Notes: generated by a model not told the origin, from the letters alone. Shown: positions 1 to 63,470, counted from the first letter of the stretch. The stretch is DNA of 64,000 nucleotides from Lepidodermella squamata (GCA_047495785.1 JBLDXI010000001.1:1-64000), one strand, 5' to 3'. Program-made: numbers and translations.

Positions 1-3000
1 CCTTGTTGCTCGATACTCGGAGACTGTCTTGAGGAATGAATGTGGTGTCATCGAGGCTCGACGATTTGGCGCAGATCTTCTTAGGAGCGGCCGTCGTCTT
101 CGGTGTCTTTGAGGTTGTGGAAGAGCCACGCTCGCGGGGAACGCGGGGACTGCTAGGCTTTCCGCTCACTCCCGGCTTTGCAGTAGTCACGGTTGTCTTG
201 CGCACAGTAGTAGTCTTTGGTGCAACCTTGAAGCAACCGAATACAGACAACTGCGCCTGAACAGGTTCCTTGGGATCTTTCTTGTTGAACACGACAGTGA
301 TCGAGTCAGCATTAACCTCCTTCGGGAACTTGGCCGGCAATTCTGAAGGCTTGTATACCTGAGGAAAAACAAGAAAGAAGTCATGATTTTGCAAACGCTG
401 CTTTGATGCTGATACCTTAGGCTCCAATACGGGTCTGGTGTAAACAACGACAGATTCGACGTTGGTATATTGCGGCAAATCGAAACCAGCGAGAGGCGTG
501 CGAGCGGGGAATCGAATGGTCGTTTCCGGTTTCTTGTCTTCCGGAGAGCTCTTCCATGGCTTCTCAGACTTTGGCCTCAGGTTCTCCTTGTCCTCGGGCC
601 TGCTCGACGTTGTAATGGAACTCGAAGGCAAGTAGATGGGTTGTGACATTCCTTCCTTCTTTTCACAAGGCTTCGGCGTGGTTCCAGGAGTAGTTGATCC
701 CTTGGGCGCGTTCGATGCTCCAGTTTGAGCTTTCGGGGTTGTCGTTTCTATGATTAGTGACAGCGTCACGTCAAAATTAAATCCACAATATAACGAGTCG
801 ATACTTACTTGGCGCCTCCTTGAAGCAGCCACGAACCGCCAACTTAGCTTCCACAGGCTTGGAGTCATCGATGCGAGTGAAGGTCAGGCCGATGGCATCT
901 GCAACCACGTCGGTCGGGAAGTTGACGGGAAGCTCCGAAGGCTTGTATTCCTAAGATTGACTACTATTAAGCAAGCCAGTCGAAATAGGTAATCTACCCT
1001 CACCTTTTCAACGTTCTTGTTCGAAGGCGATACAGTCAAGCGGACAGCCTTAACGTTCTTAAGGTCTGGCAGGTCGAAGCCAGCAAGCTCAGAAGGGCGC
1101 GGGAATTGTACTCCAACGTTGGGCAAGCGATCGTTAGGTGACGATTTCCAAGGTTGCTTGCTGTTAGGGCGAAGATTTTCCTTGTCCTCTGGCCTGCTTG
1201 AGGTGCGCAGGCTTGATGTCGGTAAAAAGGCTGGTTGGTCCATGCCTTCGCGCTTCGTGCAAGGCTTGCGGGTGCTTGTCGTTCTGCGATCCCTAACCAC
1301 CTTAGGCTTTGTCGTCGTGCGGCTAGAGACAGCCGGGCGAGCCGTAGTTGTAGTGACTGAAAAATATATTCAGATTGGTCAATTACGCCAGTTATGGAAA
1401 GGCTAATCCGTGGCAATTACCGATCCTCTCCTTCGTGCAGCAGCTCAAGCCAACGCGAGAGCGAACGGGCTTCGAGTCGTCCTTCGGTGTAAACCTGATG
1501 ACAACACTGTCGGCGGTGATAGCGTCGCGGCCAGTAAACTTGACTGGCAAATCCCTCGGATCGAAGGACTAGATTATACACAAACGGAGTAGCAATGCAA
1601 TGGAGCGAGAGAATATGACAAACATACCTTGGACACACTCCTCTTGTCTGCGCGGAAGGTCACATCCACTCGTTCGACGTTTCTCACGTCAGGAAGATCG
1701 AAGCTGAGTACTGGGGTTTCTCGGGGCAGCTCCACAGTAACCTCAGGTTGCTTGTCACGTGGGGATGACTCCCAAGGACGGCGAGCCGAAGGCCTGAGAT
1801 TTTCGCTCTCCTCCTTGTTGCTCGATACTCGGAGACTGTCTTGAGGAATGAATGTGGTGTCATCGAGGCTCGACGATTTGGCGCAGATCTTCTTAGGAGC
1901 GGCCGTCGTCTTCGGTGTCTTTGAGGTTGTGGAAGAGCCACGCTCGCGGGGAACGCGGGGACTGCTAGGCTTTCCGCTCACTCCCGGCTTTGCAGTAGTC
2001 ACGGTTGTCTTGCGCACAGTAGTAGTCTTTGGTGCAACCTTGAAGCAACCGAATACAGACAACTGCGCCTGAACAGGTTCCTTGGGATCTTTCTTGTTGA
2101 ACACGACAGTGATCGAGTCAGCATTAACCTCCTTCGGGAACTTGGCCGGCAATTCTGAAGGCTTGTATACCTGAGGAAAAACAAGAAAGAAGTCATGATT
2201 TTGCAAACGCTGCTTTGATGCTGATACCTTAGGCTCCAATACGGGTCTGGTGTAAACAACGACAGATTCGACGTTGGTATATTGCGGCAAATCGAAACCA
2301 GCGAGAGGCGTGCGAGCGGGGAATCGAATGGTCGTTTCCGGTTTCTTGTCTTCCGGAGAGCTCTTCCATGGCTTCTCAGACTTTGGCCTCAGGTTCTCCT
2401 TGTCCTCGGGCCTGCTCGACGTTGTAATGGAACTCGAAGGCAAGTAGATGGGTTGTGACATTCCTTCCTTCTTTTCACAAGGCTTCGGCGTGGTTCCAGG
2501 AGTAGTTGATCCCTTGGGCGCGTTCGATGCTCCAGTTTGAGCTTTCGGGGTTGTCGTTTCTATGATTAGTGACAGCGTCACGTCAAAATTAAATCCACAA
2601 TATAACGAGTCGATACTTACTTGGCGCCTCCTTGAAGCAGCCACGAACCGCCAACTTAGCTTCCACAGGCTTGGAGTCATCGATGCGAGTGAAGGTCAGG
2701 CCGATGGCATCTGCAACCACGTCGGTCGGGAAGTTGACGGGAAGCTCCGAAGGCTTGTATTCCTAAGATTGACTACTATTAAGCAAGCCAGTCGAAATAG
2801 GTAATCTACCCTCACCTTTTCAACGTTCTTGTTCGAAGGCGATACAGTCAAGCGGACAGCCTTAACGTTCTTAAGGTCTGGCAGGTCGAAGCCAGCAAGC
2901 TCAGAAGGGCGCGGGAATTGTACTCCAACGTTGGGCAAGCGATCGTTAGGTGACGATTTCCAAGGTTGCTTGCTGTTAGGGCGAAGATTTTCCTTGTCCT

Positions 3001-6000
3001 CTGGCCTGCTTGAGGTGCGCAGGCTTGATGTCGGTAAAAAGGCTGGTTGGTCCATGCCTTCGCGCTTCGTGCAAGGCTTGCGGGTGCTTGTCGTTCTGCG
3101 ATCCCTAACCACCTTAGGCTTTGTCGTCGTGCGGCTAGAGACAGCCGGGCGAGCCGTAGTTGTAGTGACTGAAAAATATATTCAGATTGGTCAATTACGC
3201 CAGTTATGGAAAGGCTAATCCGTGGCAATTACCGATCCTCTCCTTCGTGCAGCAGCTCAAGCCAACGCGAGAGCGAACGGGCTTCGAGTCGTCCTTCGGT
3301 GTAAACCTGATGACAACACTGTCGGCGGTGATAGCGTCGCGGCCAGTAAACTTGACTGGCAAATCCCTCGGATCGAAGGACTAGATTATACACAAACGGA
3401 GTAGCAATGCAATGGAGCGAGAGAATATGACAAACATACCTTGGACACACTCCTCTTGTCTGCGCGGAAGGTCACATCCACTCGTTCGACGTTTCTCACG
3501 TCAGGAAGATCGAAGCTGAGTACTGGGGTTTCTCGGGGCAGCTCCACAGTAACCTCAGGTTGCTTGTCACGTGGGGATGACTCCCAAGGACGGCGAGCCG
3601 AAGGCCTGAGATTTTCGCTCTCCTCCTTGTTGCTCGATACTCGGAGACTGTCTTGAGGAATGAATGTGGTGTCATCGAGGCTCGACGATTTGGCGCAGAT
3701 CTTCTTAGGAGCGGCCGTCGTCTTCGGTGTCTTTGAGGTTGTGGAAGAGCCACGCTCGCGGGGAACGCGGGGACTGCTAGGCTTTCCGCTCACTCCCGGC
3801 TTTGCAGTAGTCACGGTTGTCTTGCGCACAGTAGTAGTCTTTGGTGCAACCTTGAAGCAACCGAATACAGACAACTGCGCCTGAACAGGTTCCTTGGGAT
3901 CTTTCTTGTTGAACACGACAGTGATCGAGTCAGCATTAACCTCCTTCGGGAACTTGGCCGGCAATTCTGAAGGCTTGTATACCTGAGGAAAAACAAGAAA
4001 GAAGTCATGATTTTGCAAACGCTGCTTTGATGCTGATACCTTAGGCTCCAATACGGGTCTGGTGTAAACAACGACAGATTCGACGTTGGTATATTGCGGC
4101 AAATCGAAACCAGCGAGAGGCGTGCGAGCGGGGAATCGAATGGTCGTTTCCGGTTTCTTGTCTTCCGGAGAGCTCTTCCATGGCTTCTCAGACTTTGGCC
4201 TCAGGTTCTCCTTGTCCTCGGGCCTGCTCGACGTTGTAATGGAACTCGAAGGCAAGTAGATGGGTTGTGACATTCCTTCCTTCTTTTCACAAGGCTTCGG
4301 CGTGGTTCCAGGAGTAGTTGATCCCTTGGGCGCGTTCGATGCTCCAGTTTGAGCTTTCGGGGTTGTCGTTTCTATGATTAGTGACAGCGTCACGTCAAAA
4401 TTAAATCCACAATATAACGAGTCGATACTTACTTGGCGCCTCCTTGAAGCAGCCACGAACCGCCAACTTAGCTTCCACAGGCTTGGAGTCATCGATGCGA
4501 GTGAAGGTCAGGCCGATGGCATCTGCAACCACGTCGGTCGGGAAGTTGACGGGAAGCTCCGAAGGCTTGTATTCCTAAGATTGACTACTATTAAGCAAGC
4601 CAGTCGAAATAGGTAATCTACCCTCACCTTTTCAACGTTCTTGTTCGAAGGCGATACAGTCAAGCGGACAGCCTTAACGTTCTTAAGGTCTGGCAGGTCG
4701 AAGCCAGCAAGCTCAGAAGGGCGCGGGAATTGTACTCCAACGTTGGGCAAGCGATCGTTAGGTGACGATTTCCAAGGTTGCTTGCTGTTAGGGCGAAGAT
4801 TTTCCTTGTCCTCTGGCCTGCTTGAGGTGCGCAGGCTTGATGTCGGTAAAAAGGCTGGTTGGTCCATGCCTTCGCGCTTCGTGCAAGGCTTGCGGGTGCT
4901 TGTCGTTCTGCGATCCCTAACCACCTTAGGCTTTGTCGTCGTGCGGCTAGAGACAGCCGGGCGAGCCGTAGTTGTAGTGACTGAAAAATATATTCAGATT
5001 GGTCAATTACGCCAGTTATGGAAAGGCTAATCCGTGGCAATTACCGATCCTCTCCTTCGTGCAGCAGCTCAAGCCAACGCGAGAGCGAACGGGCTTCGAG
5101 TCGTCCTTCGGTGTAAACCTGATGACAACACTGTCGGCGGTGATAGCGTCGCGGCCAGTAAACTTGACTGGCAAATCCCTCGGATCGAAGGACTAGATTA
5201 TACACAAACGGAGTAGCAATGCAATGGAGCGAGAGAATATGACAAACATACCTTGGACACACTCCTCTTGTCTGCGCGGAAGGTCACATCCACTCGTTCG
5301 ACGTTTCTCACGTCAGGAAGATCGAAGCTGAGTACTGGGGTTTCTCGGGGCAGCTCCACAGTAACCTCAGGTTGCTTGTCACGTGGGGATGACTCCCAAG
5401 GACGGCGAGCCGAAGGCCTGAGATTTTCGCTCTCCTCCTTGTTGCTCGATACTCGGAGACTGTCTTGAGGAATGAATGTGGTGTCATCGAGGCTCGACGA
5501 TTTGGCGCAGATCTTCTTAGGAGCGGCCGTCGTCTTCGGTGTCTTTGAGGTTGTGGAAGAGCCACGCTCGCGGGGAACGCGGGGACTGCTAGGCTTTCCG
5601 CTCACTCCCGGCTTTGCAGTAGTCACGGTTGTCTTGCGCACAGTAGTAGTCTTTGGTGCAACCTTGAAGCAACCGAATACAGACAACTGCGCCTGAACAG
5701 GTTCCTTGGGATCTTTCTTGTTGAACACGACAGTGATCGAGTCAGCATTAACCTCCTTCGGGAACTTGGCCGGCAATTCTGAAGGCTTGTATACCTGAGG
5801 AAAAACAAGAAAGAAGTCATGATTTTGCAAACGCTGCTTTGATGCTGATACCTTAGGCTCCAATACGGGTCTGGTGTAAACAACGACAGATTCGACGTTG
5901 GTATATTGCGGCAAATCGAAACCAGCGAGAGGCGTGCGAGCGGGGAATCGAATGGTCGTTTCCGGTTTCTTGTCTTCCGGAGAGCTCTTCCATGGCTTCT

Positions 6001-9000
6001 CAGACTTTGGCCTCAGGTTCTCCTTGTCCTCGGGCCTGCTCGACGTTGTAATGGAACTCGAAGGCAAGTAGATGGGTTGTGACATTCCTTCCTTCTTTTC
6101 ACAAGGCTTCGGCGTGGTTCCAGGAGTAGTTGATCCCTTGGGCGCGTTCGATGCTCCAGTTTGAGCTTTCGGGGTTGTCGTTTCTATGATTAGTGACAGC
6201 GTCACGTCAAAATTAAATCCACAATATAACGAGTCGATACTTACTTGGCGCCTCCTTGAAGCAGCCACGAACCGCCAACTTAGCTTCCACAGGCTTGGAG
6301 TCATCGATGCGAGTGAAGGTCAGGCCGATGGCATCTGCAACCACGTCGGTCGGGAAGTTGACGGGAAGCTCCGAAGGCTTGTATTCCTAAGATTGACTAC
6401 TATTAAGCAAGCCAGTCGAAATAGGTAATCTACCCTCACCTTTTCAACGTTCTTGTTCGAAGGCGATACAGTCAAGCGGACAGCCTTAACGTTCTTAAGG
6501 TCTGGCAGGTCGAAGCCAGCAAGCTCAGAAGGGCGCGGGAATTGTACTCCAACGTTGGGCAAGCGATCGTTAGGTGACGATTTCCAAGGTTGCTTGCTGT
6601 TAGGGCGAAGATTTTCCTTGTCCTCTGGCCTGCTTGAGGTGCGCAGGCTTGATGTCGGTAAAAAGGCTGGTTGGTCCATGCCTTCGCGCTTCGTGCAAGG
6701 CTTGCGGGTGCTTGTCGTTCTGCGATCCCTAACCACCTTAGGCTTTGTCGTCGTGCGGCTAGAGACAGCCGGGCGAGCCGTAGTTGTAGTGACTGAAAAA
6801 TATATTCAGATTGGTCAATTACGCCAGTTATGGAAAGGCTAATCCGTGGCAATTACCGATCCTCTCCTTCGTGCAGCAGCTCAAGCCAACGCGAGAGCGA
6901 ACGGGCTTCGAGTCGTCCTTCGGTGTAAACCTGATGACAACACTGTCGGCGGTGATAGCGTCGCGGCCAGTAAACTTGACTGGCAAATCCCTCGGATCGA
7001 AGGACTAGATTATACACAAACGGAGTAGCAATGCAATGGAGCGAGAGAATATGACAAACATACCTTGGACACACTCCTCTTGTCTGCGCGGAAGGTCACA
7101 TCCACTCGTTCGACGTTTCTCACGTCAGGAAGATCGAAGCTGAGTACTGGGGTTTCTCGGGGCAGCTCCACAGTAACCTCAGGTTGCTTGTCACGTGGGG
7201 ATGACTCCCAAGGACGGCGAGCCGAAGGCCTGAGATTTTCGCTCTCCTCCTTGTTGCTCGATACTCGGAGACTGTCTTGAGGAATGAATGTGGTGTCATC
7301 GAGGCTCGACGATTTGGCGCAGATCTTCTTAGGAGCGGCCGTCGTCTTCGGTGTCTTTGAGGTTGTGGAAGAGCCACGCTCGCGGGGAACGCGGGGACTG
7401 CTAGGCTTTCCGCTCACTCCCGGCTTTGCAGTAGTCACGGTTGTCTTGCGCACAGTAGTAGTCTTTGGTGCAACCTTGAAGCAACCGAATACAGACAACT
7501 GCGCCTGAACAGGTTCCTTGGGATCTTTCTTGTTGAACACGACAGTGATCGAGTCAGCATTAACCTCCTTCGGGAACTTGGCCGGCAATTCTGAAGGCTT
7601 GTATACCTGAGGAAAAACAAGAAAGAAGTCATGATTTTGCAAACGCTGCTTTGATGCTGATACCTTAGGCTCCAATACGGGTCTGGTGTAAACAACGACA
7701 GATTCGACGTTGGTATATTGCGGCAAATCGAAACCAGCGAGAGGCGTGCGAGCGGGGAATCGAATGGTCGTTTCCGGTTTCTTGTCTTCCGGAGAGCTCT
7801 TCCATGGCTTCTCAGACTTTGGCCTCAGGTTCTCCTTGTCCTCGGGCCTGCTCGACGTTGTAATGGAACTCGAAGGCAAGTAGATGGGTTGTGACATTCC
7901 TTCCTTCTTTTCACAAGGCTTCGGCGTGGTTCCAGGAGTAGTTGATCCCTTGGGCGCGTTCGATGCTCCAGTTTGAGCTTTCGGGGTTGTCGTTTCTATG
8001 ATTAGTGACAGCGTCACGTCAAAATTAAATCCACAATATAACGAGTCGATACTTACTTGGCGCCTCCTTGAAGCAGCCACGAACCGCCAACTTAGCTTCC
8101 ACAGGCTTGGAGTCATCGATGCGAGTGAAGGTCAGGCCGATGGCATCTGCAACCACGTCGGTCGGGAAGTTGACGGGAAGCTCCGAAGGCTTGTATTCCT
8201 AAGATTGACTACTATTAAGCAAGCCAGTCGAAATAGGTAATCTACCCTCACCTTTTCAACGTTCTTGTTCGAAGGCGATACAGTCAAGCGGACAGCCTTA
8301 ACGTTCTTAAGGTCTGGCAGGTCGAAGCCAGCAAGCTCAGAAGGGCGCGGGAATTGTACTCCAACGTTGGGCAAGCGATCGTTAGGTGACGATTTCCAAG
8401 GTTGCTTGCTGTTAGGGCGAAGATTTTCCTTGTCCTCTGGCCTGCTTGAGGTGCGCAGGCTTGATGTCGGTAAAAAGGCTGGTTGGTCCATGCCTTCGCG
8501 CTTCGTGCAAGGCTTGCGGGTGCTTGTCGTTCTGCGATCCCTAACCACCTTAGGCTTTGTCGTCGTGCGGCTAGAGACAGCCGGGCGAGCCGTAGTTGTA
8601 GTGACTGAAAAATATATTCAGATTGGTCAATTACGCCAGTTATGGAAAGGCTAATCCGTGGCAATTACCGATCCTCTCCTTCGTGCAGCAGCTCAAGCCA
8701 ACGCGAGAGCGAACGGGCTTCGAGTCGTCCTTCGGTGTAAACCTGATGACAACACTGTCGGCGGTGATAGCGTCGCGGCCAGTAAACTTGACTGGCAAAT
8801 CCCTCGGATCGAAGGACTAGATTATACACAAACGGAGTAGCAATGCAATGGAGCGAGAGAATATGACAAACATACCTTGGACACACTCCTCTTGTCTGCG
8901 CGGAAGGTCACATCCACTCGTTCGACGTTTCTCACGTCAGGAAGATCGAAGCTGAGTACTGGGGTTTCTCGGGGCAGCTCCACAGTAACCTCAGGTTGCT

Positions 9001-26000: not shown

Positions 26001-29000
26001 GCTCCACGGATCCCGGCTCTTGGGACGCAAGTTCTCCTTCTGCTCTGGCTTGCTCGATGTTCTGAGGTTGGCCAGTGGAATGAACACAGGGCTGTCCATG
26101 CCGTCAGTCTTCTGGCACGGGCGCACAGTTGTTGGTGTGGTCGGGGTACTAGGCGTGGTCTTGCCAGTTCCAGTCCGGTCGCGCACCACAAGTCTGCGAG
26201 TGGTGGTGCCTTTTCCGGGTGTTGTGCTTCCTGTAAACACACAAAAACACAGATTCCATCAACTATCGCTGAGCCTACAAAAGTCCCCGATCGACTTACC
26301 GCGCACTTCCTTGAAGCAGCCGCGAACGGCCAACTTGGCTTCAACAGGCTTCTTATCGTCGAGCTTCGAGAAGGTCAACACAATCGCGTCGGCGAACACT
26401 TCGGTCGGGAACTTGAGCGGGAATTCAGACGGCTTGTACTCCTGTAGACAAAAGAACATGGCGATAGTTTAACGAACTCATCAACGCAAAACCCTCGTGC
26501 AAGCCAGATCGGTGTTGCCCATGGCGCAGCACTCCCCCGTGTTTGAAAGCAAATTCTGCCAACACCTATACTCACCTTGTCGACGTTCTTATCCGCCGGG
26601 GTGGTCGTCAGGCGGACCGATTTCACGTTCGTCAGCTTCGGAAGCTCGACACCAGACAGCTGGGAGCGCTCAGGAAACTTAACGCCAACCGTCGGGGTGC
26701 GGTCGTCGGCGGCAGAGCTCCACGGATCCCGGCTCTTGGGACGCAAGTTCTCCTTCTGCTCTGGCTTGCTCGATGTTCTGAGGTTGGCCAGTGGAATGAA
26801 CACAGGGCTGTCCATGCCGTCAGTCTTCTGGCACGGGCGCACAGTTGTTGGTGTGGTCGGGGTACTAGGCGTGGTCTTGCCAGTTCCAGTCCGGTCGCGC
26901 ACCACAAGTCTGCGAGTGGTGGTGCCTTTTCCGGGTGTTGTGCTTCCTGTAAACACACAAAAACACAGATTCCATCAACTATCGCTGAGCCTACAAAAGT
27001 CCCCGATCGACTTACCGCGCACTTCCTTGAAGCAGCCGCGAACGGCCAACTTGGCTTCAACAGGCTTCTTATCGTCGAGCTTCGAGAAGGTCAACACAAT
27101 CGCGTCGGCGAACACTTCGGTCGGGAACTTGAGCGGGAATTCAGACGGCTTGTACTCCTGTAGACAAAAGAACATGGCGATAGTTTAACGAACTCATCAA
27201 CGCAAAACCCTCGTGCAAGCCAGATCGGTGTTGCCCATGGCGCAGCACTCCCCCGTGTTTGAAAGCAAATTCTGCCAACACCTATACTCACCTTGTCGAC
27301 GTTCTTATCCGCCGGGGTGGTCGTCAGGCGGACCGATTTCACGTTCGTCAGCTTCGGAAGCTCGACACCAGACAGCTGGGAGCGCTCAGGAAACTTAACG
27401 CCAACCGTCGGGGTGCGGTCGTCGGCGGCAGAGCTCCACGGATCCCGGCTCTTGGGACGCAAGTTCTCCTTCTGCTCTGGCTTGCTCGATGTTCTGAGGT
27501 TGGCCAGTGGAATGAACACAGGGCTGTCCATGCCGTCAGTCTTCTGGCACGGGCGCACAGTTGTTGGTGTGGTCGGGGTACTAGGCGTGGTCTTGCCAGT
27601 TCCAGTCCGGTCGCGCACCACAAGTCTGCGAGTGGTGGTGCCTTTTCCGGGTGTTGTGCTTCCTGTAAACACACAAAAACACAGATTCCATCAACTATCG
27701 CTGAGCCTACAAAAGTCCCCGATCGACTTACCGCGCACTTCCTTGAAGCAGCCGCGAACGGCCAACTTGGCTTCAACAGGCTTCTTATCGTCGAGCTTCG
27801 AGAAGGTCAACACAATCGCGTCGGCGAACACTTCGGTCGGGAACTTGAGCGGGAATTCAGACGGCTTGTACTCCTGTAGACAAAAGAACATGGCGATAGT
27901 TTAACGAACTCATCAACGCAAAACCCTCGTGCAAGCCAGATCGGTGTTGCCCATGGCGCAGCACTCCCCCGTGTTTGAAAGCAAATTCTGCCAACACCTA
28001 TACTCACCTTGTCGACGTTCTTATCCGCCGGGGTGGTCGTCAGGCGGACCGATTTCACGTTCGTCAGCTTCGGAAGCTCGACACCAGACAGCTGGGAGCG
28101 CTCAGGAAACTTAACGCCAACCGTCGGGGTGCGGTCGTCGGCGGCAGAGCTCCACGGATCCCGGCTCTTGGGACGCAAGTTCTCCTTCTGCTCTGGCTTG
28201 CTCGATGTTCTGAGGTTGGCCAGTGGAATGAACACAGGGCTGTCCATGCCGTCAGTCTTCTGGCACGGGCGCACAGTTGTTGGTGTGGTCGGGGTACTAG
28301 GCGTGGTCTTGCCAGTTCCAGTCCGGTCGCGCACCACAAGTCTGCGAGTGGTGGTGCCTTTTCCGGGTGTTGTGCTTCCTGTAAACACACAAAAACACAG
28401 ATTCCATCAACTATCGCTGAGCCTACAAAAGTCCCCGATCGACTTACCGCGCACTTCCTTGAAGCAGCCGCGAACGGCCAACTTGGCTTCAACAGGCTTC
28501 TTATCGTCGAGCTTCGAGAAGGTCAACACAATCGCGTCGGCGAACACTTCGGTCGGGAACTTGAGCGGGAATTCAGACGGCTTGTACTCCTGTAGACAAA
28601 AGAACATGGCGATAGTTTAACGAACTCATCAACGCAAAACCCTCGTGCAAGCCAGATCGGTGTTGCCCATGGCGCAGCACTCCCCCGTGTTTGAAAGCAA
28701 ATTCTGCCAACACCTATACTCACCTTGTCGACGTTCTTATCCGCCGGGGTGGTCGTCAGGCGGACCGATTTCACGTTCGTCAGCTTCGGAAGCTCGACAC
28801 CAGACAGTTGGGAGCGCTCAGGAAACTTAACGCCAACCGTCGGGGTGCGGTCGTCGGCGGCAGAGCTCCACGGATCCCGGCTCTTGGGACGCAAGTTCTC
28901 CTTCTGCTCTGGCTTGCTCGATGTTCTGAGGTTGGCCAGTGGAATGAACACAGGGCTGTCCATGCCGTCAGTCTTCTGGCACGGGCGCACAGTTGTTGGT

Positions 29001-32000
29001 GTGGTCGGGGTACTAGGCGTGGTCTTGCCAGTTCCAGTCCGGTCGCGCACCACAAGTCTGCGAGTGGTGGTGCCTTTTCCGGGTGTTGTGCTTCCTGTAA
29101 ACACACAAAAACACAGATTCCATCAACTATCGCTGAGCCTACAAAAGTCCCCGATCGACTTACCGCGCACTTCCTTGAAGCAGCCGCGAACGGCCAACTT
29201 GGCTTCAACAGGCTTCTTATCGTCGAGCTTCGAGAAGGTCAACACAATCGCGTCGGCGAACACTTCGGTCGGGAACTTGAGCGGGAATTCAGACGGCTTG
29301 TACTCCTGTAGACAAAAGAACATGGCGATAGTTTAACGAACTCATCAACGCAAAACCCTCGTGCAAGCCAGATCGGTGTTGCCCATGGCGCAGCACTCCC
29401 CCGTGTTTGAAAGCAAATTCTGCCAACACCTATACTCACCTTGTCGACGTTCTTATCCGCCGGGGTGGTCGTCAGGCGGACCGATTTCACGTTCGTCAGC
29501 TTCGGAAGCTCGACACCAGACAGCTGGGAGCGCTCAGGAAACTTAACGCCAACCGTCGGGGTGCGGTCGTCGGCGGCAGAGCTCCACGGATCCCGGCTCT
29601 TGGGACGCAAGTTCTCCTTCTGCTCTGGCTTGCTCGATGTTCTGAGGTTGGCCAGTGGAATGAACACAGGGCTGTCCATGCCGTCAGTCTTCTGGCACGG
29701 GCGCACAGTTGTTGGTGTGGTCGGGGTACTAGGCGTGGTCTTGCCAGTTCCAGTCCGGTCGCGCACCACAAGTCTGCGAGTGGTGGTGCCTTTTCCGGGT
29801 GTTGTGCTTCCTGTAAACACACAAAAACACAGATTCCATCAACTATCGCTGAGCCTACAAAAGTCCCCGATCGACTTACCGCGCACTTCCTTGAAGCAGC
29901 CGCGAACGGCCAACTTGGCTTCAACAGGCTTCTTATCGTCGAGCTTCGAGAAGGTCAACACAATCGCGTCGGCGAACACTTCGGTCGGGAACTTGAGCGG
30001 GAATTCAGACGGCTTGTACTCCTGTAGACAAAAGAACATGGCGATAGTTTAACGAACTCATCAACGCAAAACCCTCGTGCAAGCCAGATCGGTGTTGCCC
30101 ATGGCGCAGCACTCCCCCGTGTTTGAAAGCAAATTCTGCCAACACCTATACTCACCTTGTCGACGTTCTTATCCGCCGGGGTGGTCGTCAGGCGGACCGA
30201 TTTCACGTTCGTCAGCTTCGGAAGCTCGACACCAGACAGTTGGGAGCGCTCAGGAAACTTAACGCCAACCGTCGGGGTGCGGTCGTCGGCGGCAGAGCTC
30301 CACGGATCCCGGCTCTTGGGACGCAAGTTCTCCTTCTGCTCTGGCTTGCTCGATGTTCTGAGGTTGGCCAGTGGAATGAACACAGGGCTGTCCATGCCGT
30401 CAGTCTTCTGGCACGGGCGCACAGTTGTTGGTGTGGCGGCTGTCCCATTTTCTGAAATTGACACTCAATCTTCACTATCGTCAGGTTTTTTTGCTGAAAC
30501 AAACGGTTGGGTTTTGTGCTTGTTGTCGATCCTTTGTGTCAATGCATTTGTTTTAATTGATGATAGAAGGAATTTTAACCTGAAATACCTTGCTTTGTTG
30601 TAGTGCCGTTCACAGTCCTTGATTGGGACTTCAGGACTGTTCGACGTGTACCTTATTTTTAACTTTTGATCAGAAAGATTTTGGATTGTTCGGTGTGGTT
30701 ACCTGGCTTTTGTGTAGTTGTGACGTTGGCATTCCGTACCTGGGATTTTAGAACAGATCGCCTCGTATCTTCATGTTACAACAATATGATATCCGCATCT
30801 CATTTGACAAGGTTTGCAACTTACTCGTGGATTGTGATGACATCGTAGATCCTATATCGTACCGGTTTATCAGAATTTGTTGATGAATTCAGTTCAGGAA
30901 ACATACCTGGTCTGGCAGTTGTTGTGACATTTCTTCCTTGAGATTTAAGAAGCATTCGCCTGCTATTCGCTATATTTATAGACCCTTTTAGTAGGGACCA
31001 TTGATGAGTAACCGAAATTTACGTGTGGTTGGGTTGCTTGTTGTACCTCCTATCATGATAACGCACCATAAGTGTCATTCTCTCATTGCATAAAAGCATC
31101 TCACACAAACCTGGCATGGCAAGCGTTTGACTCTTCAGCACGAATTTTCGCGGGGCTGAGAATAACATCAATTCATGCGAATTTACTATTGAGCACATTT
31201 ATTTATCACCTGCATCGAGGTCCAGCATAAAATTTAGTAACCCATCTTCCGGAATCGAGCAGTTGATGATCGGATTTGAAGCTGAATTTGCAAGAAAAAT
31301 TGAATTGCTTATAAAACTTCAATTGCTCAATCATACCAGCTGATCGGACTACAGTCGCGGGTGTTGATGGTTGGAGGAATGATTCGCTCATAGCGCAAGT
31401 TTGAATGTTGCAAGCTTCCACTTGAATTTGCGCTGTAACAGGTTTGCTGGCATCTTGCTTTGTGAATTCCACTTTGATGGCATCGAAGCAGTAACCATTG
31501 AATGATGCAGTCGCCGTAGGAGGGTAGACTGAAGGTTGCGCCGCTCCAGTGGCTTTCAGCGGCTCCCAGGGTGTATTTACCGTTTTTCGAGAGGAGATCG
31601 AGAAAGAGCGGATGTTTCCGGAAAGTGTTGTTAGGCTTACCTGTATATTATTTAAGTGAGACTCTAACTGTCCATGAAAATGGCCTAAAACTAACATTGC
31701 CCAATCTGACTCGTTCCTTGAAATAAAGCTCGATGAAAGGCAAGCTTTCTGGTCCATTTGATATCCAGGCCTGGCGACTGTTAACCAAGGCTTTCGCACT
31801 GTCGCCAGCATTGCTGCTCACACGAACGGAGCTGGTGCCACTCAAAAACGGATTGATCGGCTGCAAACTAGAGCACATCAAGTTGAGGCTGCTCTGGACG
31901 ATTTGGGTTGCTTAATAAAATCATATCATTTATAACATAAACATCATCCTTTGTTGACTTACAGGTGACATAAATAAGCTGAGTGATGACCTTTGACTCG

Positions 32001-35000
32001 GCTCTTCCTATAGACGGAGTTGTACCTGGTCCAGCACACTTCGCTGATAAGCAACCAGTTAGCTCGATCTGAAAGTTCGCTGCTTTTGATTCGTCTGCTT
32101 TTCGGAGAACAATTTTGATTGAGCTGACACAGTAGGCGGGAGGAAAATCCGGTAGGCGCCACATTTCTAACATTTGCTAATAGTTTATGGTTATGGATTA
32201 GATGGATTCACTGGTATATTCCTTATTTGTTAACCTGTTCCGTTCCGAATTGTGGTCCTGGGCTTACAAAATCGGATGTCGGGGAAGTTTTGATTTGTAA
32301 AAAGAAGCCACGAATGTTATCCTGAGATACGAAATGCAGGGAATTCGCTTGCACAGGCATATTCAAATCGATGATGACAAATGGATTCTTGTCGCCAGCA
32401 GCAATTTGCCATGGGTTGTTCTTAGAGCTAGCAAAAACGTTGGCTTTTTGATCAGGGTTGCTGGAAACTTGAACGCCTTTGACATATTGCGCGATTGTCG
32501 CCGCGTTTGACAGTAAATTTTCCCGGCTGTCACAATACAACGGATTCTTCAGTCCCATTCTCTCTGAAGTTTCAAATATAGCAAAAAATGACAGAGTAGG
32601 GTAATGGACTTACGGCCACAAGCTTGGATCTTCAACGCTGCTGTGATCGGCGCGTTCTTGTTAACTTTGGCGAATTTAACGAGCACGGTCGTTCCCATGG
32701 TGTTGGGTGAGAAAACGATGCGGCTTGAAACCTTGGATGCTGGTGCTACCATCTGTGAGGCGGTAGGGATAAATGAGCCATTTGTGTGATATCCGATTGT
32801 TACGTTTACTTACCTTCATGTCTTTGCTGGCCCAATTATCAGGGTCAATTCCAACCCAAGCGCCGCTGTTTTCTACCATGATTCCCCAGGTCGCGACATT
32901 GTCCCAATTCGTAAGGACAATGTCCCCAAGGTAGTAGCTAGCTGGCAAACGCATATTTACCCAAGGATCAGAATCCTCCGCGGATGAAGTCCACTTTCCA
33001 CCAAGAAACGCTCTAATGCCGTCTTTTCCCTGGCTGTTCGATGAAACGGAGAGATCCGCGTCATTCAGCAAACCGTTAGGAGCCAATGCATCGCTGTATA
33101 TGTTGCAGGGCATTTCCACGGGTCGCCTCGCCCTGTTACCCAGCAAGCCGCCTTCTTCGTCAGGAATATAAGGTTTGAAGTTACGAATAGTTCGATCTTT
33201 TTCGTTCAGTAACAATGGGCTCCGACCAGGACTATCGCAAGCTTGGATGGAAACTTGAGCTCCAGCCGGTTTGCTTTGGTCAGTTTTTATCAGGGCAATA
33301 GTCAACCCGTACATGTGTATTCCCAGCGGCAAAATTGCCGGGCCATTTTGAACCTGCAATCATAGATTACTTAGTTAGAGAAGTAATGGTTGAAATTTTA
33401 CATACGGCCATCACGAAAGTGTTAGTCTTAGCATCAAATGGGATGGCTTGAACCGAACCCGTTTGGTAAAGCCACAGGTAGTAGCCTTTGACATTGACAG
33501 TATTTTTCAAGCTTATTTGGCCGACTTCGAAAATCGCGGGGAATTGAAGAGAAATCGTAGGTTTCTTATCATCTGCAGTGGATGACCAAGGCTCTTTTGA
33601 GGTCACTCGGATAAAATCACGTTGCGCCTCATTGCTGGTAACAGTGATGTTCTCGAGCGCAACAAGGTTCGGAATGAACAGCAGATCGTAATAGTTTTTA
33701 CATTGCTGAATATTCCATTTACCAGCTGTGAAATTAATGCATAAATAAAAATTCGATTAATTTAATCCCAAAAATCTTACGCTCTTGGGGTTTAAGCATC
33801 ATTTTCTTCCATTTCGTGTCATTTGATCTCAAGATATTTGTTACAACGACGTTACGTGGCATGCAAACCGAAACTTCCAGCTTCGTAGCAGCGGCAGCTC
33901 CTTTCGTCGTCTTGGTAAGTTTTATCGCTAGTTTTTGCGCCAAGGGAGTAGTCTTGGAGAAGTCTGCTATGGACGAAGTATCCTAGAGAAAATTAGGATT
34001 CGTCATTTTGCATATGCCTTCGGGCTCAAAGGTTATTACGGTTGTTGCCGAAGCCGTTCCGTTGGGTCCTGAAACTTCCACTTGGGCACGCGAAAAGCCG
34101 GAGTTTTCCAGCAATGCTACGCGGTACAGTCGAGCATTCGGATGGTTGATCGTTACCGTCAGTTTCGGCTCGTCGTCTTGGACTGTCGATTGCCACTTGC
34201 CCGGAGCACCTGTTTGAGAAAACTATATTCAGTCGAATCGAGAAAGCAAAAAAACGAATGCCTTTTCGCTATCCTTGTATAACTATAAACCGCGAGAATG
34301 ATCATATTTGATCGCTAGCTAACTTCACCCACAATACGACAGCAACTTGGAGAAACTTGGTGACTGAATTCAAACCTTTCCGAAGAGCGCCATGCAAGCT
34401 TGGGTTGCTAGACAGGTCACTTATGGCCGCTTCGATTTTACTGTCAACAGCTAGGACATCGTAAGGAATGCAGTTCATCGGCGGCGTAACGTTAGGAAAT
34501 GGTGCGGCAGCAGCAGGGATGACATTTGTTGCCTGATTTCCAGTCGGTGGAGCCGAAGCCTTGCAAAGTTCCTGGCGGACAGCCGAAGTGTTGGTCAGAG
34601 CAGCATTGATCTTATCCACTAGACTTCCCTTGATTTTCATCACAGAAGCTGGACATGGCTTATCTTGAAATGGCGGCACTTAAAAAATAGATGAAGAAAA
34701 TTATATGAACGGGAGAGCTCCAATATTGCCTTCAAGTTGGAAACTCACAGTAAGCTGCTATTGTCTTGCAGTCACCGAATTGACAGCCGGTTATTTCAAG
34801 CTGAACTTGTGCCGAAGCTGTCGGCGAAGTTTTCACGAAGGTGATGTTTACTTTGTTCAAGCAATATCTTTGGTCGAATGTTATCATCACACCCGCCGTC
34901 TAAAGGTATTTTCTTGAGCATTTGTGGGAATTATTGAGAGGCTTCTTACCCTGAGAGGTTTGACTTCTTTGGATACTCCAGTAACGCTTCCAGTAACATC

Positions 35001-35614
35001 GAATTTGGTAACAGATTTTGGGAAAAACAGCCTAATTTGGTACAGCCTGAACGAAGACCCCTTTGGAAACTCCAGAGAAACCCAAGGGCTTAAATCGAGA
35101 AAATCACTCAGTAAATTGAATTTCAAGTTTTTAGCGACGCTTTTACTTGACATCAGTTGCTAACGATTGCCAGCCAGACTGTGCGGTAGGCGTTTGACCC
35201 GGAATCACCAGAACTTGCTTCGCTGTTTTCCCGGGAGCGTTGCTGCTGGTCTTTACATCAATCGTATCGACTATCGCTTTTGTGAAGCTCAACGGGGTAC
35301 AGGTTTGACTGATGTTCAAAGCGTGATACCACCATTTCTTTATGTCTGTATAGCGGATGAATAATAGACATCGAAAATTAACTGAATTAGACGAAAATTA
35401 ACCCTCCGAAGTCTCGAGGACCTCTTGCTTCAAAGCAGCATTCCCTTTACAAACCACCAAATCCTCAGTTGTACTGTGAGCGAAGAAGAAAGATCAGTGT
35501 TAATCGCCAAAGTAAACAATAAAGTGCTTGCCTTGTCAACCGAACGCTTGATGCGACGATAAACAACGTAACAAAGAGAAACGACGGCTGATTTCGAAAT
35601 TTAAACGTAATCAT
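1..35614 (-). CDS. Giant multi-exon secreted repeat protein (>9,000 aa in window, 3' end outside window): >50 tandem Cys-bounded F5/8C/discoidin-like domains separated by Thr/Pro/Lys/Arg-rich linkers; candidate mucin-like/adhesive protein
   Basis: ATG at 35614 gives MITFKFRNQPSFLFVTLFIVASSVRLT (signal-peptide-like). Hand splicing keeps an open frame through the first exons, the micro-exon cassette and both arrays; not every junction in 31337-35100 was traced. Recurrent motif C-x-GM-x-(F/Y)(I/L)P-x-TSS-x-ENLRP-x-PW-x-D-x-P-x-FP...NV...YKPSE-x-P-x-FP-x-V-x-AD...PV-x-A-x-L-x-V-x-GC. Fold and function are inferred. Confidence 0.85.
14086..30436 (-). repeat. Coding tandem array, 716-bp unit (23 domain copies); 2 exons/2 introns, 171 aa per unit
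   Basis: Representative unit: exon 15836-16206 (371), intron 15702-15835 (134), exon 15560-15701 (142), intron 15491-15559 (69), summing to 716. The 142-nt exon occurs 23 times. One unit is 711 bp (5-bp intronic deletion near 14820). Confidence 0.95.
30505..31281 (-). other. Cassette of 8 phase-1/phase-1 micro-exons of the giant gene (72, 45, 27, 63, 27, 66, 63, 27 nt in transcript order)
   Basis: Exons 31210-31281, 31111-31155, 31023-31049, 30907-30969, 30825-30851, 30703-30768, 30589-30651, 30505-30531. Each is flanked by AG/GT, is a multiple of 3 and is stop-free; intervening introns are 51-61 nt. Confidence 0.8.
31337..35614 (-). other. Unique N-terminal part of the giant gene: signal peptide plus about 6 divergent copies of the same domain
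   Basis: Exonic segments share the (V/T)SSN...W-x-S-x3-D-x2-P-x-(V/I) and C-terminal L-x-I-x-(A/G)C motifs, e.g. VTSNEAQRDFIRVTSKEPWSSTADDKKPTISLQFP, VSSNSQGKDGIRAFLGGKWTSSAEDSDPWVNMRLP, VSSNPDQKANVFASSKNNPWQIAAGDKNPFVIIDL. Confidence 0.8.
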
Positions 35615-35695: not shown

Positions 35696-35703
35696 CTTAT
35701 ATA
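35696..35703 (-). promoter_or_regulatory. Candidate TATA box of the giant gene
   Basis: Minus strand reads TATATAAG about 85 bp upstream of the ATG at 35614. Confidence 0.45.
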
Positions 35704-36286
35704 TCCTGTATCCTAATTTGGTTCAAAAGTTTCGCAGTCTCAAGGTACGATATCATAAACAGGTATGTTTGTTAATTGCTCCAATGTACTTCTAATGCGT
35801 CAGGTGACGATTCCGTTTTATTTTTTTGTGATTAACTGTAACGAAAGCAGATTGGCGTGACTTCAGAAAATTAAGCGCATTTGGTGCCTATATCTCTGTT
35901 CATTTTTCCAGATAGCCAGACTTTGTATATCCGCGCACGGTTGACTTCGGCAATTAACCTTTCTTTTGGATGCACATCATTTTTTCAGCTTTATTAGTTT
36001 TTGCTGCGCAATGCATCGGCCGTTCACCTTCCTAATGTAAGATACTCTCAACAACCTCTGTTCGTGTCATGGAAGAATCAAATGGTTTTATAAAAAAAAC
36101 TGCCAGCGTGGGCGAACGCGGTAATGCGAAGTTTATTAACGGGATATAAGATATCAAGTCGGATGGCAAAAAAACTAGGAGCATCAATTTTCACTCAATC
36201 GTCAGTAGGTAATCATCACACGGTTTCGACGTGGATATTCAGCATGACAGCAATGAATCCACAATTGATTCTGTATTGCATCACAA

Positions 36287-49050: not shown

Positions 49051-49677
49051 CTGAGGACTCCTTTCTGCATTTATAAGCTTAAGCTGCTAAACCTCCTTGA
49101 AAAAGACGGAATTTAAATAAAAATGCAGCTCCTTTTAAATCAATATTCATCTCAACACTTTACACTTGACCAGCTAAAACCAATCTCCCAGGCGCCAGAT
49201 AAGCGATAACAAATGACGTACTTGAATAAGTACGTTTATAGCTTGAGCTTATTTATGAAGATTTTTCTTCCGCAACTCCTGATAAAAAAACGGATAGTCG
49301 AAACGACAATGATTAATGATATTTCCTTTCCTTATTCTCTTAGATCGTAGATCAATATACGATGTCTAACAACTAAGAAGAAGTGCAAATATCCAATGCA
49401 AGCCAATTTAATAAGAAGGGACGAAATCCATGAAGATTATCGAAACAGTTAAGCAGTTGAGAGGGTTGCTCTGGCCATAGACAGCATAAATTGGCAGTTG
49501 TTTGCAGGAAGCGCGTAAAAATGGAAAACGAAAAAGATTGACGCGACTTCAGAAAACCACACCGAAACCGCAAAATTGTTTTAGCGCCAAACAACGGTGT
49601 CAAGGCTGGATTCAATATACAAGCTCATATTGAATAAATTACTGTGTTTATATAAATTAGAAACTTTACTATTTAGT

Positions 49678-53634: not shown

Positions 53635-53910
53635 ATTATTTTAAAATACATCGCTCATTGATCGTTTCAATTTGGATATTTCTTGCTAATTTTGTCATAT
53701 AAAATTGATTATTTGATCAATAAATGAATAAATGAAAGAAGATATCCACTTTTTGGCGGTTGGGTACCTCCTCAGATCGATGACATAATTAAAAGTAGTC
53801 CAGCTTCAAGTTAATCAAAAAATAGTCACGCCGTATGTAATAACGCCGACAATATCATCTGCCAGCCGATCTAACAATCTACGATATAACACCTTTTTCT
53901 ATTGTAGGTA

Positions 53911-60061: not shown

Positions 60062-63470
<3,409 letters not shown>

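What the first reader, a model, noticed from the sequence alone, without database searches (positions are those of the whole stretch)
1..35614. Giant modular secreted 'beads-on-a-string' protein gene built from two intron-containing arrays; candidate glue/mucus system
Seen: a signal peptide, ~6 divergent domains, 23 near-identical domains and >=23 more in triplets, >9,000 aa with no stop before the window edge. Linkers are Thr/Pro-rich and the 171-aa unit is basic (my count about 31 K+R vs 20 D+E). Known: F5/8C (discoidin) domains have a disulfide joining their termini and often bind glycans or membranes; flatworm adhesive proteins such as Macrostomum Mlig-ap2 are giant secreted proteins with two internal repeat regions. 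Inference: a multivalent lectin-like adhesive or mucus scaffold that would be fragmented or masked as satellite DNA by automated annotation. Novelty of the family is not established here.
Basis: partly seen in the sequence, partly recalled or inferred. Interest (0 to 1): 0.9.

Follow-up and report, generated by a model that had tools for sequence, protein, structure and literature searches.

The report
Giant secreted discoidin-bead mucin-like gene
The first 35.6 kb of the window hold most of a real, transcribed animal gene for a huge secreted protein made of 52 small lectin-type (discoidin-like) domains strung on short sugar-bearing linkers. It belongs to an uncharacterised family that genome annotations of mussels and ribbon worms label "mucin-2-like", and whether it is a glue or ordinary mucus is untested.

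Summary
A minus-strand gene starts at ATG 35614 and runs off the window at base 1. My spliced model has 108 exons, 106 GT..AG and 1 GC..AG introns, and 9,101 codons with no stop.

It encodes a signal-peptide-like N-terminus, 6 divergent domains and 8 symmetric micro-exons. Then come 23 units of 716 bp (171 aa; 22 identical units, and a 23rd identical except for its linker) and 23 complete domains in 1,812-bp a/b/c triplets.

An RNA-derived contig confirms six N-terminal introns exactly. The arrays and their link to the N-terminus have almost no RNA support.

The repeated domain is a stripped-down F5/8C (discoidin) fold:
- AlphaFold2 pLDDT 88.
- Structure-alignment Z 13-14 to neuropilin b1, DDR1, factor VIII and CASPR2.
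- hhalign 94% probability against canonical F5/8C domains.
- Pfam itself does not recognise it.

The closest named relatives are uncharacterised bead-on-a-string proteins of Mytilus, Tubulanus and Lineus. An orthologue fragment from another sample keeps the c-a-b order and intron positions, with dN/dS of 0.16 or less.

Best reading: a giant, basic, O-glycosylated, multivalent mucin-like scaffold. A specifically adhesive role is possible but unsupported.

The scan already reported a similar gene tail, discoidin triplets ending in a cystine knot, on another piece of this genome (s1-368332).

The parts
35703..35710 (-). TATA-like TATATAAG, 89 nt upstream of the ATG
   Evidence: Sequence only. Inferred promoter element, not tested.
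35532..35614 (-). Exon 1: start codon and signal-peptide-like N-terminus (basic n-region, hydrophobic core FLFVTLFIVA), followed by a GC..AG intron
   Evidence: No RNA coverage and no SignalP run.
35403..35473 (-). Exon 2
   Evidence: Its last 30 nt are in the spliced X1 contig. The reading frame is continuous with exon 1.
31337..35345 (-). Exons 3-15 encoding six divergent discoidin-like domains (protein residues about 103-203, 303-413, 458-585, 634-772, 801-926, 978-1103)
   Evidence: HMM of the array domains finds six, E 1.5e-16 to 2.9e-5. Introns 35346-35402, 35089-35146, 34900-34949, 34679-34748, 34210-34375 and 33983-34039 are confirmed by the spliced X1 contig. Exons below 33781 come from my model only.
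30505..31281 (-). Eight symmetric phase-1 micro-exons (72, 45, 27, 63, 27, 66, 63, 27 nt) encoding Thr-rich linker with an RRxxLKSQ motif. Any subset can be skipped without breaking the frame.
Evidence: Sequence and phase logic only, no RNA evidence.
14133..30451 (-). Array 1: 23 units of 716 bp (exon A 371 nt, intron 134, exon B 142, intron 69). Each encodes a 38-aa basic Thr/Pro linker plus a 133-aa domain. 22 units give the identical 171-aa protein; the first unit has a different linker.
   Evidence: The units differ at no more than one exonic site, plus intron changes in the last few units.
1..14040 (-). Array 2: 1,812-bp a/b/c triplets of 506 aa. 23 complete domains plus a 24th cut by the window edge. 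The gene continues beyond base 1.
   Evidence: Seven full triplets differ by 0-2 nt and 1 aa.
12902..13363 (-). Domain b read through its in-frame 57-nt intron. This contiguous 154-aa reference was used for the structure prediction.
   Evidence: AF2 pLDDT 88, pTM 0.82, with low confidence only in the 19 intron-derived residues. Fold searches.

Best explanation
This is the 5' 35.6 kb of one protein-coding gene on the minus strand. It encodes at least 9,101 residues and its C-terminus lies outside the window.

The product enters the secretory pathway through an N-terminal signal peptide (inferred). It is a string of 52 compact, roughly 133-residue discoidin-type (F5/8C-like) beta-sandwich domains. 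Each is bracketed by a cysteine at either end, which probably form a disulfide as in canonical discoidin domains. The domains are separated by 27-48-residue basic linkers rich in Thr, Ser and Pro, which are likely mucin-type O-glycosylation sites.

It belongs to an uncharacterised family of 'discoidin-bead' mucin-like proteins found in molluscs, nemerteans and unnamed small animals in metagenomes.

The most likely way it works is as a very long, extended, positively charged (pI about 9.9) extracellular polymer. Its many identical lectin-type beads would bind a repeated ligand, such as a glycan or another matrix component, with high avidity, so cross-linking or coating a secreted gel (mucus, glue, capsule or similar).

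Shown: gene structure, partial transcription and splicing, domain fold and family, purifying selection.
Inferred: secretion, glycosylation, ligand binding, gel or scaffold role.
For: - Gene: spliced ORF of 9,101 codons without a stop across 107 consensus introns. A spliced RNA contig confirms six introns and the strand.
- Fold: AF2 pLDDT 88, pTM 0.82. Foldseek finds IFT25, CASPR2 discoidin, DDR2, FVIII C2 and neuropilin b1. VIA-align Z 13-14 with 126-133 aligned residues. ESM-atlas TM 0.64-0.70 to F5_F8_type_C clusters.
- Homology to canonical F5/8C: hhalign 94.2%, E 1.1e-7, aligned from cysteine to cysteine. The profile hit on lamprey P0164 at 2086-2202 coincides with Pfam F5_F8_type_C at 2088-2202.
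- Family: 156 library hits. Mytilus 'mucin-2-like' has 11 beads with Thr/Pro linkers and a TSP1 tail. Tubulanus has 7 beads. Lineus 'mucin-2-like' has VWD x3, C8, TIL and LDLa x7 plus at least 10 beads.
- Selection: contig L003 from another sample keeps the c-a-b order and intron positions. Amino-acid identity is 76%, dN is 0.18, dS is saturated, and dN/dS is 0.16 or less.
- Composition: linkers are 37-42% Ser+Thr with net positive charge.
Against: - No RNA evidence links the N-terminal part to the arrays or covers the arrays properly. The only array match is a 64-nt X1 piece with 3 mismatches.
- The signal peptide was not scored by a predictor.
- The tissue of expression is unknown.
- No ligand is known, and the domain lacks about 30 residues of the canonical discoidin domain, so canonical binding loops may be absent.
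- Pfam F5_F8_type_C does not match even at E<=10.
- The linkers are far shorter than the Pro/Thr/Ser-rich (PTS) regions of true mucins.
- The near-perfect identity of the units could be partly an assembly or polishing effect. Depth in DNA run X2 suggests about 60 copies of the array-1 segment, not 23.
Confidence: 0.7

Rival explanations
1. It is specifically the surface-binding component of a temporary adhesive (a duo-gland type glue). That would make it a functional analogue of flatworm ap2, working with polycationic 'cohesive' proteins encoded elsewhere in this genome.
For: - Two successive internal arrays of about 23 units parallel Mlig-ap2, which has 21 x 255 aa followed by 25 x 221 aa.
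- Discoidin domains recur in temporary adhesives, for example sea-urchin Nectin with six FA58C domains.
- The protein is basic and likely O-glycosylated.
- Earlier scan notes report giant polycationic repeat proteins and a discoidin/cystine-knot gene in this genome (not checked by me).
- Relatives in Lineus and in contigs L001/L002 carry VWD/C8/TIL/LDLa modules, and the Mytilus protein has a TSP1 tail. Together these resemble the ap2 end modules.
Against: - There is no expression, footprint or knock-down evidence.
- This protein's N-terminus has none of the ap2 modules.
- The ap2 antibody peptides are absent.
- No ap2-sized protein was among the 150 listed profile hits.
- The flatworm adhesion papers I read mention no discoidin domain in ap1 or ap2.
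- The named relatives are annotated only as mucin-like.
Confidence: 0.2
2. It is a multivalent immune or clearance agglutinin, a secreted pattern-binding protein like hemocytin/hemolectin or DMBT1, rather than a structural gel component.
For: - The weaker profile hits include 'HMCT-like' (hemocytin-like) proteins of Mya arenaria and other multi-F5/8C proteins.
- Many identical lectin-type domains would give high avidity for microbial surfaces.
- The positive charge favours binding to anionic cell walls.
Against: - The closest relatives are mucin-like bead proteins, not hemocytin.
- No VWD, C8 or other hemocytin modules were found in the window.
- No binding data exist.
Confidence: 0.07
3. It is a polyprotein precursor cut at basic sites in the linkers into free single-domain lectins.
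For: - The linkers carry RR or RxRR motifs (RDRR in the c-to-a linker, RRxxLKSQ in the micro-exons).
- The units are identical, as in other polyproteins.
Against: - A furin-type R-x-[KR]-R site occurs only once per triplet and never in array 1 (9 sites in 9,101 residues).
- The acidic relatives lack such sites.
- A cystine-knot tail, as reported for the related gene on another piece, fits a polymer rather than a precursor.
Confidence: 0.03
4. It is non-coding satellite DNA or a dead gene whose open frames are accidental.
For: Automated tools would see 716-bp and 1,812-bp tandem repeats of more than 99.9% identity.
Against: - Zero stops in 27.3 kb of spliced frame and 107 intact splice sites with consistent phases.
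- A confidently folding domain.
- Conservation with dN/dS of 0.16 or less in another species.
- A spliced RNA contig.
Confidence: 0.01

Closest known systems
Uncharacterised 'mucin-2-like' discoidin-bead proteins of spiralians: Mytilus californianus XP_052090877.1, Tubulanus polymorphus XP_074658701.1, Lineus longissimus XP_064639835.1
   Same: - The same stripped-down, Pfam-invisible discoidin-like bead with terminal cysteines.
- Beads alternate with Thr/Pro-rich linkers in long arrays of near-identical units.
- Profile E-values of 5e-43 to 2e-27.
   Different: - Those proteins are acidic or neutral (pI 4.3-6.5), while this one has pI 9.9.
- Their linkers are longer, about 70 aa in Mytilus.
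- Lineus has an N-terminal VWD/C8/TIL/LDLa block and Mytilus a TSP1-containing tail. This gene starts directly with beads.
- This gene has many more beads (at least 52) and two distinct arrays.
- None of them has been studied experimentally, as far as my searches show.
Canonical F5/8 type C (discoidin) domains, e.g. factor V/VIII C domains, neuropilin b1, DDR1/2, CASPR2, and sea-urchin Nectin (six FA58C domains, an adhesive protein)
   Same: - The beta-sandwich fold (Z 13-14).
[quoted passage not shown]
- The conserved 'C..GM...I.....SS' start and the 'W.S..D..PW/V' core.
- Nectin is likewise secreted and made only of tandem discoidin domains.
   Different: - About 30 residues of the canonical domain are missing.
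- Pfam PF00754 and PF22633 do not match.
- Sequence identity is 10-19%.
- There are 52 or more copies rather than 1-6.
- Glycosylated linkers sit between every pair of domains.
Macrostomum lignano adhesion protein Mlig-ap2 (14,794 aa)
   Same: - A giant secreted glycoprotein whose core is two successive arrays of about 20-25 near-identical units.
- It was fragmented in short-read transcriptomes.
   Different: [quoted passage not shown] Its units are 255 and 221 aa, with no domain assigned.
- Here the N-terminus is made of discoidin-like domains and the units are 171 aa and 506-aa triplets.
- No sequence similarity was detected, although the ap2 sequence itself was not available to me.
Gel-forming mucins (MUC2/MUC5AC type), including lamprey 'mucin-5AC-like' XP_078460294.1, which carries four canonical F5/8C domains
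   Same: - A secreted giant.
- Folded cysteine-bracketed domains interrupt O-glycosylated Thr/Pro sequence, as CysD domains do in mucins.
- A related gene in this genome is reported to end in a cystine knot.
- A mucin that contains F5/8C domains does exist.
   Different: - No VWD-C8-TIL assemblies were found in the 1,257-residue N-terminal region.
- Linkers of 27-48 aa are much shorter than mucin Pro/Thr/Ser-rich (PTS) domains.
- The folded beads make up about three quarters of the mass.

Membership tests
F5/8 type C (discoidin) domain superfamily | Eight-stranded beta-sandwich (jelly-roll) fold of the galactose-binding-domain-like type | tested here: met
   AF2 pLDDT 88, pTM 0.82. Foldseek and VIA-align top hits are all discoidin/F5/8C/CBM32 domains, Z 13-14, rmsd 3.0-3.9 over 126-133 residues. 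Atlas TM 0.64-0.70.
F5/8 type C (discoidin) domain superfamily | Cysteine near the N-terminus and cysteine at the C-terminus of the domain, forming the terminal disulfide | tested here: met
   All four array domain types and all six N-terminal domains begin and end with a Cys. hhalign aligns them with the terminal Cys of canonical domains. The disulfide bond itself cannot be shown here.
F5/8 type C (discoidin) domain superfamily | Match to Pfam PF00754 / PF22633 above the gathering score | tested here: not met
   No hit on the whole domain b, or on relatives' domains, at E<=10. The only hit is F5_F8_type_C_2 at E 0.0085, 17 bits against a cutoff of 27.8, on one N-terminal exon.
F5/8 type C (discoidin) domain superfamily | Detectable sequence homology to canonical members | tested here: met
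   hhalign A1 against A2: probability 94.2%, E 1.1e-7, 113 columns. The profile hits P0164 and P0145 exactly where Pfam places F5_F8_type_C. The best PDB sequence hit is a 'coagulation factor 5/8 type domain protein', E 0.006.
F5/8 type C (discoidin) domain superfamily | Ligand binding through the loops ('spikes') at one end of the sandwich | not testable with these tools
   About 30 canonical residues are absent. No ligand can be inferred from the sequence.
Spiralian discoidin-bead 'mucin-2-like' proteins (uncharacterised) | Tandem stripped-down discoidin-like beads alternating with Thr/Pro-rich linkers | tested here: met
   Profile E 5e-43 (Mytilus, 11 beads), 6e-36 (Tubulanus, 7 beads), 2e-27 (Lineus). 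The layout was read directly from the sequences.
Gel-forming mucins | N-terminal VWD-C8-TIL assemblies | tested here: not met
   Pfam on ten exon pieces covering most of the N-terminal region found none. The whole N-terminal region is accounted for by six discoidin-like domains and spacers.
Gel-forming mucins | C-terminal cystine knot (CTCK) for dimerisation | not testable with these tools
   The C-terminus lies beyond base 1 of the window. A note from the scan reports a cystine knot at the end of a similar gene on another piece of the genome, which I did not check.
Flatworm adhesion protein 2 (Mlig-ap2 type) | TIL/vWD/C8/LDL block at the N-terminus and TIL/TSP-1 at the C-terminus around two repeat arrays | tested here: not met
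   Two arrays are present, but the N-terminal block is absent. The C-terminus is not in the window. The ap2 architecture is taken from PMC6410801 and PMC8621496.
Flatworm adhesion protein 2 (Mlig-ap2 type) | Sequence similarity of the repeat units | tested here: inconclusive
   The published ap2 peptides are absent from the model and from the stored hits. No hit longer than 4,781 aa was among the 150 listed. The ap2 repeat sequences are held only as images, so no direct comparison was possible.

The most novel reading that the evidence does not exclude
The gene is the surface-binding half of a temporary-adhesion system in this animal, working with the giant polycationic proteins that the scan noted elsewhere in the genome. 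In addition, the unassigned repeat units of flatworm ap2 proteins are cryptic members of the same stripped-down discoidin family. The VWD/C8/TIL/LDLa ... beads ... TSP1 proteins of nemerteans and molluscs, flatworm ap2 and this gene would then form one ancient spiralian family of glue and mucus scaffolds.
Probability: 0.15. Interest if true: 0.7.

Novelty: new variant of a known kind. Interest (0 to 1): 0.45.

Why it matters
Giant repetitive secreted proteins are what animal mucus and glues are made of. They are routinely broken up or masked in genome annotation and short-read transcriptomes.

This locus gives a nearly complete, base-level example. It defines a compact discoidin-type domain that Pfam does not recognise, yet that is spread through molluscs, nemerteans and small animals in metagenomes under the label 'mucin-2-like'.

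A profile for this bead would let annotators recognise the family. The bead is small (about 133 residues), folds confidently and could be expressed alone to ask what it binds.

The arrays are more than 99.9% identical, introns included, and are GC-enriched even in their introns. That makes them a clean case of concerted evolution inside a gene.

If the adhesive reading were borne out, it would connect flatworm glue proteins to a wider family.

Tried and rejected
- TRF found nothing because the periods exceed 500 bp. The repeat finder and my own scripts were used instead.
- Pfam on unspliced exon pieces gave only one sub-threshold discoidin hit. Pfam on the whole domain gave nothing.
- The search for homologous proteins with the 368-aa array-2 stretch found nothing, probably because of its length window.
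- A naive dynamic-programming gene finder mis-spliced the region below 32235. I rebuilt it by hand using domain logic and phases.
- I tried to identify the organism from the HIPK neighbour. All hits were about 70-75% identical across arthropods, a brachiopod, nemerteans and molluscs, so this was not informative.
- The atlas feature search pointed weakly to a rotifer-containing cluster (0.94), which I did not follow up.
- The supplement of the Mlig-ap2 paper holds the repeat alignments only as images, so no direct comparison was possible.
- Looking up the contigs of the closest fragments gave only 0.7-1.2-kb pieces.
- The search of earlier findings by sequence was blank.
- Rejected readings: satellite DNA or pseudogene, and the antisense plus-strand ORFs of 203-206 aa in array 1, which are mechanical. 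The RNA joints are CT..AC on the plus strand, meaning a minus-strand gene.
- The 'opposite strands' joints of X1 at 32235-33596 look like low-depth assembly artefacts, and I did not use them.
Full report
**1. What is in the sequence**

The left 35.6 kb of the window differ in composition from the rest: GC is 0.52-0.57 over 1-30000 against about 0.40-0.45 further right.

The repeat finder shows 23 copies with a 716-bp spacing between 14084 and 30500. The ORF list shows a second periodicity of 1,812 bp from about 14000 down to 1.

Translating the minus strand of one unit of each kind shows short exons bounded by GT..AG. In array 1, a 371-nt exon A and a 142-nt exon B are separated by a 134-nt phase-0 intron, and units are joined by a 69-nt phase-1 intron. 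In array 2, three related domains (a, b, c) each have a phase-0 intron at the same place. Phase-1 introns lie between c-a and a-b, and there is no intron between b and c.

Two peptide motifs, ENLRP and [YF][KD]P[SR][ED], each occur 46 times in strict alternation, 23 pairs per array. Every junction in every unit has intact splice sites of consistent phase.

**2. Gene model**

Run X1 supplied a 1,172-nt contig that lies on the window in six pieces, joined by CT..AC skips. These are GT..AG introns of a minus-strand gene, at 35346-35402, 35089-35146, 34900-34949, 34679-34748, 34210-34375 and 33983-34039. The six pieces form one open frame.

Starting from these, and using phases and the recurring domain pattern, I built the rest by hand:
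- Exon 1 (35614-35532) carries the ATG and a signal-peptide-like sequence, followed by a GC..AG intron.
- Exons 3-15 encode six domains.
- Eight symmetric phase-1 micro-exons lie at 31281-30505.
- The two arrays follow.

The model has 108 exons, 27,304 nt and 9,101 codons with no stop. A TATA-like TATATAAG sits 89 nt upstream of the ATG.

Exon 1, the exons below 33781, the micro-exons and the arrays have no RNA support here. The only exception is a 64-nt X1 piece in the first array unit. Because all micro-exons are phase 1-1, the frame from exon 15 into array 1 is kept whichever of them are used.

**3.

All of them hold:
- The array-1 unit is 171 aa with 31 K+R and 20 D+E. All 22 full units encode the same protein, and the first unit differs only in its linker.
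- The triplet is 506 aa, and the seven full copies differ at one residue.
- At the DNA level the 716-bp units differ at no more than one exonic site, plus intron changes in the last units. The 1,812-bp units differ at 0-2 sites.
- An HMM built from the four array bead types finds exactly six further domains in the N-terminal 1,257 residues, E 1.5e-16 to 2.9e-5.
- The window therefore holds 52 complete beads and part of a 53rd.
- The whole product has pI 9.9. Linkers are 27-48 aa, 37-42% Ser+Thr, with 4-12 basic and 0-1 acidic residues.

**4. What the bead is**

Pfam sees almost nothing. There was one sub-threshold F5_F8_type_C_2 hit on an N-terminal exon and none on the complete domain b, even at E<=10.

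Domain b has an in-frame intron without stops, so it could be given by reference. With an 18-row alignment of the window's own domain pieces (A1), AlphaFold2 gave a confident beta-sandwich: pLDDT 88, pTM 0.82, with low confidence only in the 19 intron-derived residues.

The structure searches agree:
- Foldseek against the PDB returns IFT25, the CASPR2 discoidin domain, DDR2, factor VIII C2 and neuropilin b1.
- The Foldseek-independent search gives Z 13-14 over 126-133 residues to neuropilin b1, DDR1, factor VIII, CASPR2 and discoidin I, followed by CBM32 modules.
- The ESM atlas gives TM 0.64-0.70 to F5_F8_type_C clusters.

Sequence-level homology is also detectable:
- The A1 profile hits a lamprey 'mucin-5AC-like' protein at 2086-2202, where Pfam places F5_F8_type_C at 2088-2202.
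- hhalign of A1 against an alignment of canonical F5/8C domains gives 94.2% probability, E 1.1e-7. The alignment runs from the N-terminal to the C-terminal cysteine, with about 30 canonical residues missing in the middle.

So the bead is a stripped-down, divergent discoidin-type domain.

**5. Relatives**

The exhaustive profile search found 156 proteins at E<=1e-3. The best named ones are:
- Mytilus californianus 'mucin-2-like': 11 beads separated by Thr/Pro linkers of about 70 aa, ending in a cysteine-rich tail with a TSP1 domain.
- An uncharacterised Tubulanus polymorphus protein with 7 beads.
- Lineus longissimus 'mucin-2-like', with VWD x3, C8, TIL and LDLa x7 followed by at least 10 beads.

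Two Logan contigs encoding an unnamed relative (P0123) carry C8, TIL and LDLa ORFs upstream of the beads. These more distant relatives are acidic (pI 4-6.5).

The closest relatives, at 50-78% identity, are short unnamed fragments from Logan and ENA assemblies. They are basic like this gene.

One of them, L003, is a 1.2-kb contig that shows the same c-a-b order and the same intron positions. Over 271 aligned codons, identity is 76%, dN is 0.18 and synonymous sites are saturated. Where dS can be estimated, dN/dS is 0.11-0.16. The protein and its triplet layout are therefore conserved under purifying selection in another species.

**6. How it probably works**

Shown: the gene, part of its transcription and splicing, the fold and family of the bead, and selection on the protein.

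Inferred from established knowledge of the families:
- A signal peptide sends it to the secretory pathway.
- Thr/Ser/Pro linkers are typical mucin-type O-glycosylation sites that stiffen and hydrate the chain.
- Discoidin-type domains commonly bind glycans, lipids or matrix proteins through the loops at one end.
- Dozens of identical copies would give high avidity.

I therefore read it as a very long, positively charged, multivalent scaffold of a secreted gel.

I cannot tell which gel, whether gliding mucus, glue, capsule or something else. No tissue information is available, and the one reads search and one reads lay-out allowed were used on the N-terminal region.

**7. Comparison with what is known, and the adhesive idea**

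Mlig-ap2 is 14,794 aa. It has TIL, vWD, C8 and LDL modules at the N-terminal end, 21 x 255-aa and 25 x 221-aa repeats in the middle, and TIL and TSP-1 at the C-terminal end. It carries Gal-beta(1-3)-GalNAc (PMC6410801, PMC8621496).

The two-array layout is a real parallel. The end modules of ap2 reappear in relatives of this gene: Lineus, L001/L002 and the Mytilus tail.

Against kinship, this gene's own N-terminus has none of these modules and the published ap2 peptides are absent. No ap2-sized protein was among the 150 listed of the 156 profile hits.

Discoidin domains do recur in temporary adhesives, for example sea-urchin Nectin with six FA58C domains (PMC10057474). The glue reading therefore stays possible. 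I give it about 0.2 as a specific claim.

A full-text search for gel-forming mucins with discoidin domains in invertebrates found no paper. I found no description of this bead family.

**8. Earlier notes of the scan**

- Note s1-368332, on another piece of the same genome, describes the tail of a giant protein made of discoidin-like triplets on basic Thr-rich linkers, ending in a cystine knot. The same kind of gene was thus already found by the scan on other DNA. I could not test whether it is the end of this gene, an allele or a paralogue.
- Notes s1-391871 and s1-368357 report discoidin/cystine-knot modules next to a giant polycation, and an orphan polycationic repeat protein. They are leads for the adhesive reading only.
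- Note s1-394030 is the micro-exon cassette inside this gene. I confirmed its exon sizes and phases.

**9. Caveats**

- The perfect identity of the units may be partly an effect of assembly.
- In DNA run X2, summed contig depth in the bin holding array-1 sequence is 4,504 against 75 in unique sequence. That suggests about 60 copies in that organism, or contributions from paralogues.
- The organism is not identified.

**10. Verdict**

This is a new, basic variant, lacking VWD modules and extremely homogenised, of an uncharacterised but widespread discoidin-bead mucin-like family. Interest 0.45.

Noticed in passing
window 30505-31281 (-): Eight symmetric phase-1 micro-exons (72, 45, 27, 63, 27, 66, 63, 27 nt) alternate between an RRxxLKSQ-containing piece and an 8-residue Ser/Thr piece. 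Any subset could be skipped in frame. The motif resembles the TRRLVVRDR of the array-1 linker.
   Followed up: partly
window 1-30451 versus 31337-35614: GC is raised in the arrays in introns as well as exons. Array 1: exons 0.60, introns 0.47, GC3 0.73. Array 2: exons 0.55, introns 0.38. N-terminal part: exons 0.48, introns 0.33. This fits GC-biased gene conversion during array homogenisation.
   Followed up: partly
window 30300-30480: In DNA run X2 (a roughly 1% diverged organism B), summed contig depth is about 4,504 here against about 75 in the unique N-terminal region. This suggests about 60 copies of the array-1 segment against 23 in this assembly.
   Followed up: no
window 36324-36838 (-): The gene immediately upstream on the same strand has exons encoding a Lamin Tail Domain (PF00932, E 1.3e-7, just under the cutoff on a partial exon). 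It may be an intermediate-filament or lamin-like gene. Flatworm adhesive organs use a specific intermediate filament with such a domain, but adjacency here may be chance.
   Followed up: partly
L001 1582-11713 and L002 597-7298: In an unnamed organism (samples SRR25569777 and SRR25569782), ORFs with C8, TIL and LDLa domains lie upstream, on the same strand, of a 570-aa intron-less exon with three acidic discoidin-like beads. The same layout is seen in Lineus 'mucin-2-like'.
   Followed up: partly
L003 1-1230: A contig from sample SRR15204649 carries an orthologue or paralogue fragment with the same c-a-b order and intron positions. Its domain-a intron is longer, about 170 nt against 53.
   Followed up: yes
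window 35474-35531 (-): The first intron has a GC donor (AAG|GCAAGC). It is the only non-GT donor among the 107 introns and is not covered by RNA.
   Followed up: no
window 32235-33596: The low-depth X1 contigs show four 'opposite strands' joints here. They are probably hairpin artefacts of low-coverage assembly rather than biology.
   Followed up: no
window 45332-63470: Other genes in the window: a small heat-shock protein (HSP20, 45332-45886 +), a zf-MYND protein (47290-48327 -), a large gene with a beta-propeller repeat (Pfam Hyd_WA; 50410-53634 +), aconitase by eye (55586-57723 -) and a HIPK-type kinase (60882-63470 +, 70-75% identical to arthropod, brachiopod, nemertean and mollusc HIPK2).
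   Followed up: partly
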